Positions 5,541 to 50,890 are shown, numbered from the whole stretch's first letter. The stretch is 63,514 nucleotides of DNA, filler included, from Octopus bimaculoides (GCF_001194135.2; 5 parts of 5 records of this genome joined end to end with filler, not necessarily neighbours in it); one strand, 5' to 3'. The notes: a model not told the origin generated them from the sequence alone. Program-made: numbers and translations.

Positions 5541-5895
5541 TAAAACCAGAAACAAGAAACAAAATGCGAAAAGAAAAACCGTCGCCTGAAGCTTCTCAGA
5601 ACAAGAAACAAAATCCCTAAGAATAGTCTTTGACATGTTCCAATTGAAGGCGATTGTCTTACCGAAAATGTCTGCCGGCCAAAAGCGATGTGAAGCATAT
5701 GCGAAACTATAGGAGCCTGCATTTATGCTACGTGTCCTTCTGTTTTGTGTGACACTAGAAAGTGAGCAGAGAGGAGAAACGCTTCAGTAAAAGATATACT
5801 ACTATCTATCGATAGTAAACGAAACTGAGGCGTATTTGTACGAGAATCCGGTCAAAAAGAAGGATTTTTCTACTACTGGACTGCTGGTTTCGAAA

Positions 5896-33919: not shown

Positions 33920-34306
33920 GAAGGTGTATGGTTTAGTGTTTAGGGAATTGCAGTCATATTCAGAAGATTCTGGTTTCAATTCGTAGACTTGGCAGTACAC
34001 TGTATTCTTGAGCAAAACACTTCATTTTACATTACTCCAGTTCACTCAGCAGTAAATGATTAATTCTGCGATGGGTTGATATCTGAACCAACGTTTTTTT
34101 AAAGTAGTGGGGCATGGTTTGACGTTATCTGAATGTGTGTGTGTGAGGGAAGGGGGCATCTTGACCTACAACCTCTAAATTTTGGATGCTCTCTGCAACG
34201 TTTAGTCTATAGATGTCTAACAATGAACTAACAGAAGTACAGTTTCCAAAGCGAATGAAAGGGTACAGGCAAAGGATCAAGAATAACTCACCCAAAGATT
34301 ACTCAC

Positions 34307-34396
34307 CATTTCCTTGTGGTTTGGATAATACGCTTGGTCGATCAATGGGAACTTGTCCGGTCCAAGTTTCTTTTGGATCTGGATTAAGTGTGCCAT
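34307..34396 (-). CDS. Syn: Synapsin coding exon 5 (90 nt; possible 15-nt extension to 34292)
   Basis: ctctctccccacAG|ATG GCA...GAA ATG|GTGAGT. Encodes MAHLIQIQKKLGPDKFPLIDQAYYPNHKEM. The next exon was not found in the window. Confidence 0.98.
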
Positions 34397-35297: not shown

Positions 35298-35448
35298 CAC
35301 CCAAGGTTTATCTTGAAAGTTGTAAATGGAATCCATAGAATTAATACTAGTAACACCGCCATAATGGAACCCCATGATCAGGTTACGCCAGTCCTCACAA
35401 GCGTCACGCACATGTTGTCTGACGAGCACAAAGTCTGGCTTGAAAGAC
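35298..35448 (-). CDS. Syn: Synapsin coding exon 4 (151 nt)
   Basis: tttttctgtgtgcAG|G TCT...TGG GTG|GTAAGT. Encodes SFKPDFVLVRQHVRDACEDWRNLIMGFHYGGVTSINSMDSIYNFQDKPWV (domain C). Confidence 0.98.
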
Positions 35449-36520: not shown

Positions 36521-37860
36521 ATATATGTTTGTGAGTCTTTGTGTCTGTGTTTGTTGACAACTGGTGCCGGTGTGTTAATGTCTCTGTAACTTAGTGCTTC
36601 AGCAAAAGTGACCAACAAAATAAACACCAGGCTTGTGAAAAACATAAGCACTGGGGGTGATACATTCAACTAAAAATTCTTCAAGGCAATGCCCCAGCAT
36701 GGCCACAGTCATGTGACTGAAACAAGTAAAAGATATAGAGTAACTCTACATTAAGCACTGGAATGTACAACTTCCTGTAAGTCAGGCTGCCTCAAGGCCC
36801 CAGCAGACAAAATGGAAAAGGTAATGCCCCAGAATATGGCAAGGAAAATGTGTTTGAACATCCACTCGGGCTCACAGGGGTCACACTCACAAACAAGTTG
36901 GGAAGCACATTTCTTACCACACAACCGTACCAGTACCCCATCATTAAGATCAATTGTAAATAAATCTGATTTGCCCCTGTAACCTGGGGCAAATAACACC
37001 AACATCCCCACCGCCACCACCAACATCCCCACCAACAACAACATCCCCCACCACCAACAACACCACCACCACCACCACCAACATCCCNNNNNNNNNNNNN
37101 NNNNNNNNNNNNNNNNNNNNNNNNNNNNNNNNNNNNNNNNNNNNNNNNNNNNNNNNNNNNNNNNNNNNNNNNNNNNNNNNNNNNNNNNNNNNNNNNNNNN
37201 NNNNNNNNNNNNNNNNNNNNNNNNNNNNNNNNNNNNNNNNNNNNNNNNNNNNNNNNNNNNNNNNNNNNNNNNNNNNNNNNNNNNNNNNNNNNNNNNNNNN
37301 NNNNNNNNNNNNNNNNNNNNNNNNNNNNNNNNNNNNNNNNNNNNNNNNNNNNNNNNNNNNNNNNNNNNNNNNNNNNNNNNNNNNNNNNNNNNNNNNNNNN
37401 NNNNNNNNNNNNNNNNNNNNNNNNNNNNNNNNNNNNNNNNNNNNNNNNNNNNNNNNNNNNNNNNNNNNNNNNNNNNNNNNNNNNNNNNNNNNNNNNNNNN
37501 NNNNNNNNNNNNNNNNNNNNNNNNNNNNNNNNNNNNNNNNNNNNNNNNNNNNNNNNNNNNNNNNNNNNNNNNNNNNNNNNNNNNNNNNNNNNNNNNNNNN
37601 NNNNNNNNNNNNNNNNNNNNNNNNNNNNNNNNNNNNNNNNNNNNNNNNNNNNNNNNNNNNNNNNNNNNNNNNNNNNNNNNNNNNNNNNNNNNNNNNNNNN
37701 NNNNNNNNNNNNNNNNNNNNNNNNNNNNNNNNNNNNNNNNNNNNNNNNNNNNNNNNNNACCACCACCAACATTCCCACCACCACCAACATCCACCGCCAC
37801 CACCAACATCCCCGCCACTACCATGAACAAGAACAGCAAAGCACAAGCAGCGCCACCTAC

Positions 37861-37952
37861 CTGACAACTCTGGTGCCATTCCTCAATACTTGAATGTCGA
37901 CCATGGTCCCTTGGTCTGTGTAGGCAGCAACATTGATTTCAGGAAACTCTGC
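37861..37952 (-). CDS. Syn: Synapsin coding exon 3 (92 nt)
   Basis: catgcccttccAG|GCA GAG...GTC AG|GTAGGT. Encodes AEFPEINVAAYTDQGTMVDIQVLRNGTRVV(R). Confidence 0.97.
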
Positions 37953-39370: not shown

Positions 39371-40290
39371 GGGTACTTCAGAGTGACAAGTACACCCACG
39401 TACAGAGTGACAAGTACACCCAAGTAGAGTGACAAGTACACCCACATACAGAGTGACAAGTACACCCAAGTACTNNNNNNNNNNNNNNNNNNNNNNNNNN
39501 NNNNNNNNNNNNNNNNNNNNNNNNNNNNNNNNNNNNNNNNNNNNNNNNNNNNNNNNNNNNNNNNNNNNNNNNNNNNNNNNNNNNNNNNNNNNNNNNNNNN
39601 NNNNNNNNNNNNNNNNNNNNNNNNNNNNNNNNNNNNNNNNNNNNNNNNNNNNNNNNNNNNNNNNNNNNNNNNNNNNNNNNNNNNAGTACACCCAAGTAGA
39701 GTGACAAGTACACCCACATACAGAGTGACAAGTACACCCAAGTACAGAGTGACAAGTACACCCAAGTACAGAGTGACAAGTACACCCAAGTAGAGTGACA
39801 AATACACCCACATACAGAGTGACAAGTACACCCAAGTACAGAGTGACAAGTACACCCAAGTAGAGTGACAAGTACACCCACATACAGAGTGACAAGTACA
39901 CCCAAGTACTGAGTGACAAGTACACCCAAGTACAGAATGACAAGTACACCCAAGTACAGAGTGACAAGTACACCCACGTACAGAGTGACAAGTACACCCA
40001 CGTACAGAGTGACAAGTACACCCACGTACAGAGTGACAAGTACACCCAAGTACAGAGTGACAAGTACACCCAAGTACAGAGTGACAAGTACACCCAAGTA
40101 CAGAGTGACAAGTACACCCAAGTACAGAGTGACAAGTACACCCAAGTACAGAGTGACAAGTACACCCAAGTACAGAGTGACAAGTACACCCAAGTAGAGT
40201 GACAAGTACACCCACATACAGAGTGACAAGTACACCCAAGTACAGAGTGACAAGTACACCCAAGTACAGAATGACAAGGTACACCCAAGT
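39371..40290. repeat. 24-bp minisatellite GAGTGACAAGTACACCCAAGTACA with 22-bp and CACATA/CACGTA variants
   Basis: Directly visible; interrupted by an N gap at 39475-39684. Confidence 0.97.
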
Positions 40291-40344: not shown

Positions 40345-40402
40345 CTGCTCTATTCGTATGTCCCAGTCACCAAATAGCTTCTTACCGCGGAAATATTTCG
40401 AC
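40345..40402 (-). CDS. Syn: Synapsin coding exon 2 (58 nt)
   Basis: ttcttcattgacAG|G TCG AAA...GAG CAG|GTGAGT. Encodes SKYFRGKKLFGDWDIRIEQ and completes the W codon from exon 1. Confidence 0.97.
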
Positions 40403-46245: not shown

Positions 46246-46638
46246 NNNNNNNNNNNNNNNNNNNNNNNNNNNNNNNNNNNNNNNNNNNNNNNNNNNNNNN
46301 NNNNNNNNNNNNNNNNNNNNNNNNNNNNNNNNNNNNNNNNNNNNNNNNNNNNNNNNNNNNNNNNNNNNNNNNNNNNNNNNNNNNNNNNNNNNNNNNNNNN
46401 NNNNNNNNNNNNNNNNNNNNNNNNNNNNNNNNNNNNNNNNNNNNNNNNNNNNNNNNNNNNNNNNNNNNNNNNNNNNNNNNNNNNNNNNNNNNNNNNNNNN
46501 NNNNNNNNNNNNNNNNNNNNNNNNNNNNNNNNNNNNNNNNNNNNNNNNNNNNNNNNNNNNNNNNNNNNNNNNNNNNNNNNNNNNNNNNNNNNNNNNNNNN
46601 NNNNNNNNNNNNNNNNNNNNNNNGTGTGTGTCTGTGTC

Positions 46639-48000: not shown

Positions 48001-48536
48001 NNNNNNNNNNNNNNNNNNNNNNNNNNNNNNNNNNNNNNNNNNNNNNNNNNNNNNNNNNNNNNNNNNNNNNNNNNNNNNNNNNNNNNNNNNNNNNNNNNNN
48101 NNNNNNNNNNNNNNNNNNNNNNNNNNNNNNNNNNNNNNNNNNNNNNNNNNNNNNNNNNNNNNNNNNNNNNNNNNNNNNNNNNNNNNNNNNNNNNNNNNNN
48201 NNNNNNNNNNNNNNNNNNNNNNNNNNNNNNNNNNNNNNNNNNNNNNNNNNNNNNNNNNNNNNNNNNNNNNNNNNNNNNNNNNNNNNNNNNNNNNNNNNNN
48301 NNNNNNNNNNNNNNNNNNNNNNNNNNNNNNNNNNNNNNNNNNNNNNNNNNNNNNNNNNNNNNNNNNNNNNNNNNNNNNNNNNNNNNNNNNNNNNNNNNNN
48401 NNNNNNNNNNNNNNNNNNNNNNNNNNNNNNNNNNNNNNNNNNNNNNNNNNNNNNNNNNNNNNNNNNNNNNNNNNNNNNNNNNNNNNNNNNNNNNNNNNNN
48501 NNNNNNNNNNNNNNNNNNNNNTGTGACATATATACA

Positions 48537-49853: not shown

Positions 49854-50134
49854 CAGTCGGTGTGGGGATCGTCAATGACAAGGAGGGTCTTACATCGGTC
49901 CTTGTTGACATTTGACCTCTGACCTGAGAATATGCCCTTGGCAATCCCGACCGCGCTGGTCTTCGATGGGGAACTGGGCGCACTCGGCGAAGGCCCCTTC
50001 CGTATCGGAAGCACGGGGACCTGGCCTTGCTCTTGGGCATCACGTAGCTCGCCCTGGAGGTCACCTGAGCTGAAGCGTCTCCGGAGGAAGCTGACTCCCG
50101 TCGAGAAGTTGTCCTTGAATGTTGAGAACGAAAT
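49854..50134 (-). CDS. Syn: Synapsin coding exon 1 (domains A/B and start of C); start assigned to a putative non-AUG ATT codon
   Basis: Manual translation gives ISFSTFKDNFSTGVSFLRRRFSSGDLQGELRDAQEQGQVPVLPIRKGPSPSAPSSPSKTSAVGIAKGIFSGQRSNVNKDRCKTLLVIDDPHTDW. It contains the synapsin domain A motif LRRRFSS and the domain C start LLVIDD.HTDW. Donor is TG|GTAAGG (phase 2). The 3' boundary is solid; the 5' boundary is inferred. Confidence 0.93.
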
Positions 50135-50890
50135 TTTGACGGGTTTTGTTGGAACGATTTAAGGGAAAAAATGAGAAAGACTTTTGGAGAGAGACAAAAA
50201 AGGAAGGAAGAGGGGAAAGAATTGTTTGTTTTGTTGTTTTCCTTTTTTTGTTAAATATGAGAAAGACAGACAGAGAAAAGAAAGAAATGGGAGGATGACC
50301 TTTTTTTAAAAAAAATTGAAGGAAGATTGTAGAAGGCCCCTGAAGAAGTAAGTTTTGATCTTTTGTTTTTTTAAATAAAAGAGAAATGATGGAGAAAATT
50401 GGAGCCAAATGATGAAGGAATCAAGCGTTTTCTGTATCTTTTTAGATAGAAGATTGAAGAGCTGAAGGCATAGGTTGAAAAAGGTGAAGAATGTAGAGAA
50501 AGAAGGAAGGAGTTATAATAGTGGCAGTAGGAGGAGGAAGAGAAAGTAGGAGGTGAAAATTAGAGAGGAGGAGAATTTGGAGAAAGGAGGAAAGAGTAAA
50601 GGGTAGGAGGTGCAAAGCAAGAAAGGGTGAGAGAGTATGAGATTGTGGGTGTGGGTGTGGTTAGGAAGGAAGCTAGAAAGGGGAGCAGTTAATGGGGTAG
50701 CAGAGGAGGAGTAGAGAGCTTGAAAGGAGGGAGGAGGGTGGTTTGGAGGTAGATAGGCAGGTAGATAAAGAGAGAGGCAGCAGGGAAGAAGTGTGAGGGG
50801 GGAGAGAAAGATGGTGAAGGAGGAAGACTTTGAAAGGTTAAGTGTGAAAGAAGAAGGATTGGTTATTGTAGTTTAGGTTCTTGTTGCATC
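50135..50890 (-). promoter_or_regulatory. Putative pyrimidine-rich synapsin 5' leader with a single 9-aa uORF (50471-50442, MPSALQSSI)
   Basis: A C/T-rich minus-strand tract directly upstream of exon 1, with only one ATG in about 750 nt. The transcription start is not determinable. Confidence 0.5.

What the first reader, a model, noticed from the sequence alone, without database searches (positions are those of the whole stretch)
50132..50161. Synapsin appears to start at a non-AUG (AUU) codon aligned with the fly non-AUG start
Seen: upstream of domain A the frame reads TAA(50161-50159)-I-V-P-T-K-P-V-K-I-S-F-S-T-F-K-D-N-F-S-T-G-V-S-F-L-R-R-R-F-S-S, with no Met until exon 3. The usual M of M-N-Y/F-LRRR is Val (GTC). 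The ATT at 50134-50132 sits in GTCAAA-ATT-T, matching the invertebrate CAAA-ATG context. The first AG after the stop (AAG at 50115) is a weak acceptor and would cut off part of the conserved segment. Recalled, to be verified: Drosophila synapsin begins MNFSSFKSSFTSNVNFLKRRFSSGDL from a CUG codon. ISFSTFKDNFSTGVSFLRRRFSSGDL aligns to it without gaps over 26 residues, with I opposite the initiator. Inference: near-cognate initiation is an ancient protostome feature of synapsin translational control, and automated octopus models would likely mis-annotate the N-terminus carrying the PKA site.
Basis: partly seen in the sequence, partly recalled or inferred. Interest (0 to 1): 0.85.

Follow-up and report, generated by a model that had tools for sequence, protein, structure and literature searches.

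The report
Octopus synapsin starts at AUU codon
The octopus gene for the nerve-terminal protein synapsin has no normal ATG start and most likely begins at an ATT codon; a non-ATG start was published for this gene in 2019, but with a different codon and without the cross-phylum comparison made here.

Summary
On the minus strand an in-frame TAA (50161-50159) is followed by IVPTKPVK-I(ATT 50134-50132)-SFSTFKDNFSTGVSFLRRRFSS. There is no in-frame ATG before exon 3, and the vertebrate-type Met is Val (GTC).

The basic claim is already published. Maiole et al. 2019 (PMC6817820) reported a non-AUG isoleucine start for O. vulgaris and O. bimaculoides synapsin. Their spliced cDNA contains this region, which rules out an upstream ATG exon joined at the AG at 50115. 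They named the ATC just after the stop as initiator.

I number codons from the Leu of LRRRFSS as 0, so the ATT is codon -16. Among 51 distinct exon-1 sequences (molluscs; metagenome contigs that look annelid or arthropod; a spider; three insects), codon -16 is ATT (28), ATG (19), CTG (3) or CTT (1, with an upstream ATG). It is never ATC or ATA. The untranslated context ACC-GCC-AAA is conserved. In 12 sequences a stop lies three codons upstream.

The fly anchor is weaker. The fly N-terminus found by Edman sequencing is 16 codons downstream, and insects conserve coding sequence upstream of -16. The phenomenon is known; the codon assignment and deep conservation appear new. No direct initiation data exist.

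The parts
50159..50161 (-). In-frame TAA stop that closes the reading frame upstream of the synapsin N-terminus
   Evidence: Also printed in O. bimaculoides and O. vulgaris sequences by Maiole et al..
50156..50158 (-). ATC (Ile), first codon after the stop. This is the initiator predicted in the 2019 paper. It is not conserved.
   Evidence: Fig. 1 legend. Argonauta has CGG at this position. The -3 base is T.
50135..50143 (-). Initiation context CCC GTC AAA (A at -3, CAAA before the start). It corresponds to the ACC GCC AAA context conserved in the other sequences.
   Evidence: A at -3 in 28/28, C at -4 in 27/28. In the worm-metagenome copy these codons lie between a stop and the ATT, so they cannot be translated.
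50132..50134 (-). ATT, the proposed AUU initiation codon (codon -16, counting the Leu of LRRRFSS as 0)
   Evidence: It is ATT in 28/28 distinct sequences that have Ile here. The homologous codon is ATG or CTG in other lineages.
50096..50131 (-). Conserved N-terminal extension SFSTFKDNFSTG (codons -15 to -4) ahead of domain A
   Evidence: Alignment A1. Codon table with synonymous variation.
50093..50095 (-). GTC (Val) at the position of the vertebrate-type initiator Met (codon -3)
   Evidence: Val also in Argonauta, Lottia, Nucella and both worm-metagenome copies.
50066..50086 (-). LRRRFSS, the domain A PKA/CaMKI phosphorylation motif
   Evidence: Motif function from Diegelmann 2006 and Maiole 2019.
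50114..50115 (-). First AG after the stop, the only candidate 3' splice site. It lies inside the conserved coding segment.
   Evidence: Spliced cDNA primed upstream of it exists.
50135..50346 (-). 5' leader present in O. vulgaris cDNA (primer 218F at 50346-50327). It is colinear with the genome, has 14 G in 212 nt and has no ATG, GTG or ACG.
   Evidence: This amplicon spans no intron, so genomic DNA carry-over is not excluded.
50469..50471 (-). Nearest upstream ATG. It is out of frame and opens a 9-codon uORF (MPSALQSSI). It is unknown whether it lies in the transcript.
49854..50134 (-). Coding part of exon 1 (domains A and B and the start of C), ending in the donor G|GTAAGG
40345..40402 (-). 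Exon 2 (SKYFRGKKLFGDWDIRIEQ)
37861..37952 (-). Exon 3, which holds the first in-frame ATG (DQGTMVD)
35298..35448 (-). Exon 4
34307..34396 (-). Exon 5. A second donor 15 nt downstream adds VSNLW.
   Evidence: Syn8.2 isoform.

Best explanation
The window holds the 5' end of an octopus synapsin gene whose exon 1 is identical to the published O. bimaculoides exon 1. I propose the following mechanism. The mRNA has an AUG-free, G-poor leader. Scanning ribosomes initiate at AUU (50134-50132), which sits in a strong context with A at -3 and CAAA before the codon. The product begins (Met)-SFSTFKDNFSTG, 13 residues ahead of the LRRRFSS kinase site.

This start position is old. Homologous genes use ATT, ATG or CTG at the same codon. 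Most molluscs also keep an in-frame AUG at codon -3, so they could make a short and a long form. Octopods, Lottia and both worm-metagenome copies lost that AUG, so in those that also lack an ATG at -16 (octopods, Lottia, the ATT-type worm copy) the AUU start is obligatory.

What is shown: the absence of AUG, the presence of the region in spliced cDNA, and the conservation pattern. What is inferred: actual initiation at AUU, insertion of Met, and any regulatory role.
For: 1. There is no in-frame ATG between TAA and exon 3. Argonauta and Lottia show the same absence, with stops 46 and 43 codons upstream of the Leu.
2. Published spliced cDNA is primed from 50152-50133 into downstream exons, and the cDNA itself reads ATT.
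3. Codon -16 in 51 distinct sequences is ATT 28, ATG 19, CTG 3 and CTT 1. The CTT case has an in-frame ATG 16 codons upstream.
4. All 28 Ile codons at -16 are ATT. Other Ile codons in the same exons are ATC 50, ATT 22 and ATA 19. Neighbouring codons vary synonymously: AAA/AAG, and TCG/TCC/TCT/TCA.
5. Twelve of the 28 ATT-bearing sequences, all worm-metagenome contigs, have TAA or TGA only three codons before the ATT. The three codons between, ACC GCC AAA, are not near-cognates, yet they are conserved, while everything further upstream has diverged.
6. The same GCCAAAATTTC string occurs in Lottia, Bulinus, contig L001, a spider and the worm-metagenome contigs.
7. The position is the annotated or called Met in Elysia, Batillaria, Nucella and the ATG-type worm-metagenome copy. 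In that worm copy, the only one of these whose DNA I read, stops lie close upstream.
Against: - No ribosome profiling, N-terminal peptide or mutagenesis exists for any AUU-type synapsin.
- The +4 base is U, not the preferred G.
- AUU is usually a weak initiator (my own knowledge, not tested here), and in octopus there is no in-frame AUG as a fallback. The first downstream AUG, at 50040, is out of frame.
- The published paper assigns the start to ATC.
- In octopods the five codons before the ATT are conserved, with the only variable base at a third position (CCC, CCG, CCA). That pattern could also mean translation from further upstream.
- Bivalve-like and insect sequences conserve in-frame protein sequence upstream of -16. 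There the ATT or CTG may be internal.
- Many of the 28 ATT sequences are closely related worms. I count roughly 9-10 deep lineages, and I inferred the taxon of the metagenome contigs from sample series and sequence similarity.
- No conserved downstream hairpin was found.
Confidence: 0.75

Rival explanations
1. Translation starts at the ATC directly after the stop (50158-50156), as predicted by Maiole et al. 2019. The protein would begin (Met)-VPTKPVKISF.
For: ATC is a near-cognate, it is the first codon of the open frame, and it has G at +4. It is the published assignment. The five codons before the ATT are conserved among three octopods, with a third-position change.
Against: The -3 base is T, a poor context. 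Argonauta has CGG at this position. Nothing similar exists outside Octopus. In the worm-metagenome contigs the frame is closed three codons before the ATT. The paper gives no argument beyond 'first codon after the stop'.
Confidence: 0.1
2. A so far unseen upstream exon carrying an AUG is spliced to the AG at 50115. ISFSTFK would then be intronic and the protein would start elsewhere.
For: The AG at 50115 is preceded by a fairly pyrimidine-rich stretch, tttcgttctcaacattcaag. The Argonauta NCBI model starts exactly after the equivalent AG. Gene predictors add upstream exons in several species.
Against: Spliced O. vulgaris cDNA was amplified with a forward primer at 50152-50133, upstream of that AG. 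The segment upstream of the AG is conserved as protein, with synonymous changes, across phyla. Predicted upstream exons share no sequence between species. AAG is a weak acceptor.
Confidence: 0.03
3. Initiation occurs downstream of the ATT at another non-AUG codon (AAG -10, ACG -5), or the mature N-terminus is produced by cleavage near the Leu of LRRR, as the fly Edman result suggests.
For: Edman sequencing of the fly 70 kDa synapsin gave L-K-R-G-F-S-S. ACG at 50101-50099 is a near-cognate.
Against: Octopus Leu 0 is CTC, which is not a near-cognate. ACG and AAG at -5 and -10 are not conserved: -5 is TCG in 17 of 28 sequences. Protein-level conservation of codons -15 to -4 needs translation from at or before -16. 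A Leu N-terminus fits proteolysis better than initiation; that last point is my inference.
Confidence: 0.06
4. Sequencing or assembly error, RNA editing, or a dead gene: the real codon is ATG, or the locus is not functional.
For: None found. Cephalopods edit RNA heavily (general knowledge).
Against: Four independent sources read ATT: this window, the JGI O. bimaculoides sequence, O. vulgaris cDNA clones and Argonauta. A-to-I editing cannot turn AUU into AUG, and the cDNA reads ATT. The gene is expressed and conserved.
Confidence: 0.01

Closest known systems
Octopus vulgaris / O. bimaculoides synapsin non-AUG start (Maiole et al. 2019, Sci Rep 9:15430, PMC6817820)
   Same: It is the same gene, and for O. 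bimaculoides the same exon 1 sequence. It makes the same argument: an in-frame stop upstream, no ATG, and an isoleucine initiator.
   Different: The paper names ATC, the first codon after the stop, as initiator. It gives no comparative or context analysis, and it states that only mollusc synapsins have an unusual start. Here the conserved codon is ATT, eight codons further down, and the feature extends to a spider, insects and metagenome contigs that look annelid or arthropod.
Drosophila Syn CUG initiation (Klagges 1996; Godenschwege 2004 as cited by Diegelmann 2006; FlyBase release 6.04 list of non-AUG starts)
   Same: It is the orthologous gene. It has no ATG upstream of domain A in the cDNA and a near-cognate start. 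The 26-residue N-terminal segment aligns without gaps. Culex, Pararge and Carabus have CTG with A at -3 at the aligned codon.
   Different: The codon is CUG, not AUU. The experimentally sequenced fly N-terminus starts 16 codons downstream, at the Leu of LKRR. Insects carry a conserved Cys motif upstream of the aligned codon. I could not check which CUG FlyBase annotates.
Evolutionarily conserved non-AUG-initiated N-terminal extensions (Ivanov et al. 2011, as summarised in PMC4528330); EIF4G2/DAP5 non-AUG start (Takahashi 2005, cited in PMC6817820)
   Same: A near-cognate codon in good context, with coding-type conservation that begins at that codon and upstream of, or without, an AUG.
   Different: In those surveys CUG dominates. 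Here it is AUU, kept across phyla, and in several lineages it is the only possible start rather than an alternative to an AUG.

Membership tests
Synapsin | Domain C (Pfam Synapsin and Synapsin_C) | tested here: met
   PF02078 at 3.8e-47 and PF02750 at 3e-17 on the exon 1-5 translation.
Synapsin | Domain A with the RRxS kinase site near the N-terminus | tested here: met
   LRRRFSSGDL at 50086-50057. It is invariant in alignment A1.
Near-cognate (non-AUG) translation start | No in-frame AUG between the upstream stop and the conserved coding sequence | tested here: met
   The same holds in Argonauta, Lottia, the spider and one worm-metagenome copy.
Near-cognate (non-AUG) translation start | The region is part of the mature mRNA, and no AUG exon is spliced in | tested here: inconclusive
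   Literature only. Spliced cDNA from primer 200F (50152-50133) includes the region. The transcript 5' end is unmapped, and the longer 218F-219R amplicon has no intron.
Near-cognate (non-AUG) translation start | A codon one base away from AUG, in a strong context (purine at -3, G at +4) | tested here: inconclusive
   AUU with A at -3 and CAAA before it is met, and is conserved in 27-28 of 28 sequences. The +4 base is U, not G.
Near-cognate (non-AUG) translation start | Coding-type conservation starts at the codon, and codon identity is conserved beyond what the amino acid requires | tested here: met
   ATT in 28/28, against 24% ATT among other Ile codons of the same exons. Upstream sequence diverges, with stops at -20.
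Near-cognate (non-AUG) translation start | Direct evidence of initiation (initiation-site profiling, N-terminal peptide, mutagenesis) | not testable with these tools
   No such data are reachable. None is reported in PMC6817820.
Fly-type synapsin CUG start | The initiator lies at the homologous codon | tested here: inconclusive
   CTG at the aligned codon in Culex, Pararge and Carabus, and Leu in Ceratitis. But the fly Edman N-terminus is at codon 0, and the position of FlyBase's CUG was not retrievable.

The most novel reading that the evidence does not exclude
AUU in the context (A/G)CC-GCC-AAA-AUU-UC is the ancestral start codon of protostome synapsin. It has been kept for over 500 million years in molluscs, chelicerates and, judging from metagenome contigs, annelids. 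It has been exchanged only for AUG or CUG by single-base steps. Where an AUG survives 13 codons downstream, leaky scanning gives a long and a short isoform. Where it was lost (octopods, Lottia, one worm-metagenome copy; the spider and the insects examined also have no Met there), all synapsin depends on a weak start codon. The supply of a major presynaptic phosphoprotein would then be sensitive to start-codon stringency factors such as eIF1 and eIF5.
Probability: 0.5. Interest if true: 0.65.

Novelty: already known. Interest (0 to 1): 0.45.

Why it matters
For annotation, octopus, Argonauta and Lottia synapsin models are truncated or labelled partial. Several gastropod, insect and spider models carry invented upstream exons. 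All of these would be corrected by allowing an AUU or CUG start at one defined codon.

For biology, a start codon kept as AUU across phyla is a rare, clean case of selection for a weak initiator in a neuronal gene. It corrects the published ATC assignment. It connects the mollusc observation to the Drosophila CUG case, which the 2019 paper treated as unrelated. It also defines a conserved 13-residue segment ahead of the PKA site whose function has not been studied.

The basic phenomenon was already in print, so the gain is a refinement and a generalisation, not a discovery of a new kind.

Tried and rejected
- **Conserved RNA structure downstream of the ATT.** RNAalifold on 13 diverse sequences predicted no pairs. 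The window fold has z = -1.33, which is not significant.
- **Splice acceptor directly upstream of the conserved context in the worm-metagenome contigs.** The stops there are TAA or TGA, and the preceding bases carry no AG. Rejected.
- **RNA editing creating an AUG.** This is impossible from AUU, and the cDNA reads ATT.
- **Transcript-derived ORFs of the same species in the protein database.** None found. The best hit is Argonauta at 78% identity, and the database returned no protein longer than about 400 aa.
- **Reading Klagges 1996 for the fly CUG position.** The paper is not held. A full-text search for the fly peptide found nothing.
- **DNA for Tribolium, termite and crab models.** Not on record, so the Ile codon in those arthropods is unknown.
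- **Candiani 2010.** It does not discuss start codons.
- **TIMP or other genes in the piece.** The ORF list shows only repeat-derived ORFs besides synapsin.

Full report
**Observation.** The text of the finding is accurate. On the minus strand the frame reads TAA (50161-50159), ATC GTT CCA ACA AAA CCC GTC AAA, ATT (50134-50132), then SFSTFKDNFSTG, GTC (Val, 50095-50093), SF, and LRRRFSS (50086-50066). I number codons from the Leu of LRRRFSS as 0. The ATT is then -16, the vertebrate-type Met position is -3, and the stop is -25. Exon 1 runs to 49854 (donor G|GTAAGG). Exons 2-5 lie at 40402-40345, 37952-37861, 35448-35298 and 34396-34307, all with canonical splice sites. The first in-frame Met is in exon 3. 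Pfam confirms synapsin. The first AG after the stop is at 50115. No ATG occurs in any frame for 337 nt upstream of the ATT.

**Prior publication.** Maiole et al. 2019 (PMC6817820) cloned O. vulgaris synapsin using the O. bimaculoides genome. [quoted passage not shown] Their Figure 1 legend names ATC as the predicted initiator. Their Additional File 1 prints O. bimaculoides exon 1, which matches the window apart from bases evidently lost when the file was turned into text. It has GVSF, where O. vulgaris has GVGF.

Their primers map exactly onto the window: 218F at 50346-50327, 200F at 50152-50133, 219R at 49956-49975 and 192F at 37883-37861. The 200F-201R product spans introns, so sequence upstream of the AG at 50115 is in spliced mRNA. 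The 218F-219R clones are colinear with the genome for about 300 nt (95.7% identity). They carry three in-frame stops, and they read ATT. That amplicon has no intron, so genomic DNA carry-over cannot be excluded for it. The core claim is therefore already known. The paper also says that only mollusc synapsins have an unusual start, which overlooks the fly.

**Which codon.** The first protein search returned 50 exon-1 ORFs from invertebrate genomes and metagenomes. The second returned annotated models. I obtained DNA for the following:

- a close unnamed relative (L001), which is closest to the octopods;
- an unnamed ENA assembly (L002);
- Bulinus, Argonauta and Lottia;
- Culex, Pararge, Trichonephila and Carabus;
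- 80 metagenome contigs.

Most of those contigs come from sample series that I take to be gutless marine worm communities. That taxon is my inference from the sample series and the sequences.

Codon -16 across 51 distinct sequences carrying the N-terminal segment:

| Codon at -16 | Count | Note |
|---|---|---|
| ATT | 28 | all Ile codons at this position |
| ATG | 19 | |
| CTG | 3 | Culex, Pararge, Carabus |
| CTT | 1 | in-frame ATG 16 codons upstream |

ATC and ATA never occur at -16. Other Ile codons of the same exons are ATC 50, ATT 22 and ATA 19, and flanking codons vary synonymously. With about 9-10 deep lineages, chance retention of ATT is of the order of 1e-5 or less.

Octopus, Argonauta and Lottia each lack any in-frame ATG back to the next stop, and each has Val at -3.

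One synapsin copy in the worm metagenomes reads stop-ACC-GCC-AAA-ATT-TCN. The stop is TAA or TGA, and there is no AG. The three intervening codons are not near-cognates, yet they are conserved, while sequence further upstream is unalignable between species. A second copy in the same samples has ATG at exactly this codon, with stops 4-10 codons upstream in about half of the sequences.

The same GCCAAAATTTC string is found in Lottia, Bulinus, L001, the spider and the worm contigs. A at -3 is invariant, and C at -4 occurs in 27 of 28. That C is the third base of what would be a four-fold degenerate codon, which argues for a nucleotide-level initiation context rather than coding.

The published ATC has T at -3 and is CGG in Argonauta.

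**Mechanism.** These steps are inferred. A scanning ribosome crosses a leader with no AUG, GUG or ACG (14 G in 212 nt). It starts at AUU with initiator Met-tRNA. The product is Met-Ser-Phe-Ser..., which probably loses the Met.

Most molluscs keep AUG at -3 (L001, Bulinus, and bivalve-like contigs). They could make two isoforms by leaky scanning. In octopus, ribosomes that miss the AUU meet an out-of-frame AUG at 50040.

No conserved downstream hairpin supports the start.

**The fly link.** FlyBase lists Syn with a CUG start, citing Klagges 1996. Diegelmann et al. 2006 state that the first ATG lies downstream of domain A. They also state that Edman sequencing of the 70 kDa isoform gave L-K-R-G-F-S-S, 'leucine encoded by CTG', in a sample contaminated by another polypeptide. 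That is codon 0, not -16.

I could not retrieve the fly genomic sequence. The tephritid Ceratitis model reads LNFSSFKSSFTSNVNFLKRRFSSGDL. Culex, Pararge and Carabus have CTG there, with A at -3. A Leu N-terminus fits proteolysis of a longer precursor better than initiation, which is my inference.

Insects also conserve an in-frame motif further upstream. Examples are GKISECGKYCGP in beetles, VKIDRSGCPGICGP in Lepidoptera, VNISAIATAGCGRYCAPP in Ceratitis and VTISSCLRSCGP in a termite. The motif starts with another '(K/T/N)-Ile': ATT in Carabus, seven codons after a stop, and ATA in Pararge. In insects the real start may therefore lie upstream of -16. Bivalve-like sequences likewise conserve DLFDFDFSSFVKAAK before the ATT.

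**Scope.** Deuterostome models start at -3 or -4 (MNYLRRR, and the amphioxus primer). So does a group of metagenome contigs with stops close upstream. The extension is thus present in molluscs, arthropods and the worm contigs, and it is absent in the deuterostomes and that group of unidentified metagenome contigs.

**Annotation.** Argonauta and Lottia models are 'partial'. Bulinus, Culex, Pararge, Pieris, Plutella, Trichonephila and Carabus models add upstream Met exons with no similarity to each other.

**Verdict.** The phenomenon is published for this very gene. What appears new is the assignment to AUU, its invariance and context across phyla, and the link to arthropods. No direct evidence of initiation exists.

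Noticed in passing
L088 (Pararge) about 5812-5871; L090 (Carabus) about 2151-2204; proteins P0067, P0061, P0169, P0226, P0268: Insect synapsins conserve an in-frame Cys motif (KISECGKYCGP, VKIDRSGCPGICGP, VNISAIATAGCGRYCAPP) 17-25 codons upstream of the codon aligned to the octopus ATT. The motif begins with a second '(K/T/N)-Ile': ATT in Carabus, seven codons after a stop, and ATA in Pararge. The insect start may be there rather than at the annotated CUG.
   Followed up: partly
L008-L060 (JGI metagenome contigs, e.g. L028 and L022 from sample Ga0209255, L024 and L045 from Ga0056108): The same metagenomes, probably gutless marine worms, hold two synapsin copies. One has ATT at the start position (TAKISYSSFRDNISSGVNF). 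The other has ATG there (MALSSWRENFSSGVSF).
   Followed up: partly
L002/L003 (ENA ERZ25069859) 2094-2150: The N-terminal motif is duplicated in tandem (TSFETFK-LSFSSFR). Codon -16 is CTT here, and an in-frame ATG lies 16 codons upstream. This is the only sequence without a start-type codon at -16.
   Followed up: partly
window 34292-34306 (minus strand): A second GT donor lies 15 nt downstream of the exon 5 donor and would add VSNLW. This matches the Syn8.2 isoform described for O. vulgaris gonads.
   Followed up: partly
window 50135-50700 (minus strand): The upstream region is very G-poor on the gene strand (26 G in 539 nt) and CT-rich. It contains a single ATG, at 50471, which opens a 9-codon uORF. 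Argonauta does not share this composition.
   Followed up: partly
L087 5575-6335, L088 21212-22544, L090 8808-10059: A TIMP gene sits on the opposite strand immediately after the annotated part of synapsin in Culex, Pararge and Carabus. This is the known nested synapsin-TIMP arrangement. No TIMP ORF was seen in the window piece.
   Followed up: no
window 37088-37758, 39475-39684, 46246-46623, 48001-48521: Runs of N (assembly gaps) lie inside the synapsin introns, flanked by microsatellite and minisatellite repeats that generate long spurious ORFs.
   Followed up: no
PMC6817820 versus PMC1660579: The 2019 octopus paper states that only mollusc synapsins have an unusual start codon, although the Drosophila CUG start had been in the literature since 1996-2006. 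It also lists a Phe 'start' for Loligo. L001, which I take (without identifying it) to be a decapod cephalopod, carries an ATG at -3, so that Phe may simply be the end of an incomplete cDNA.
   Followed up: no
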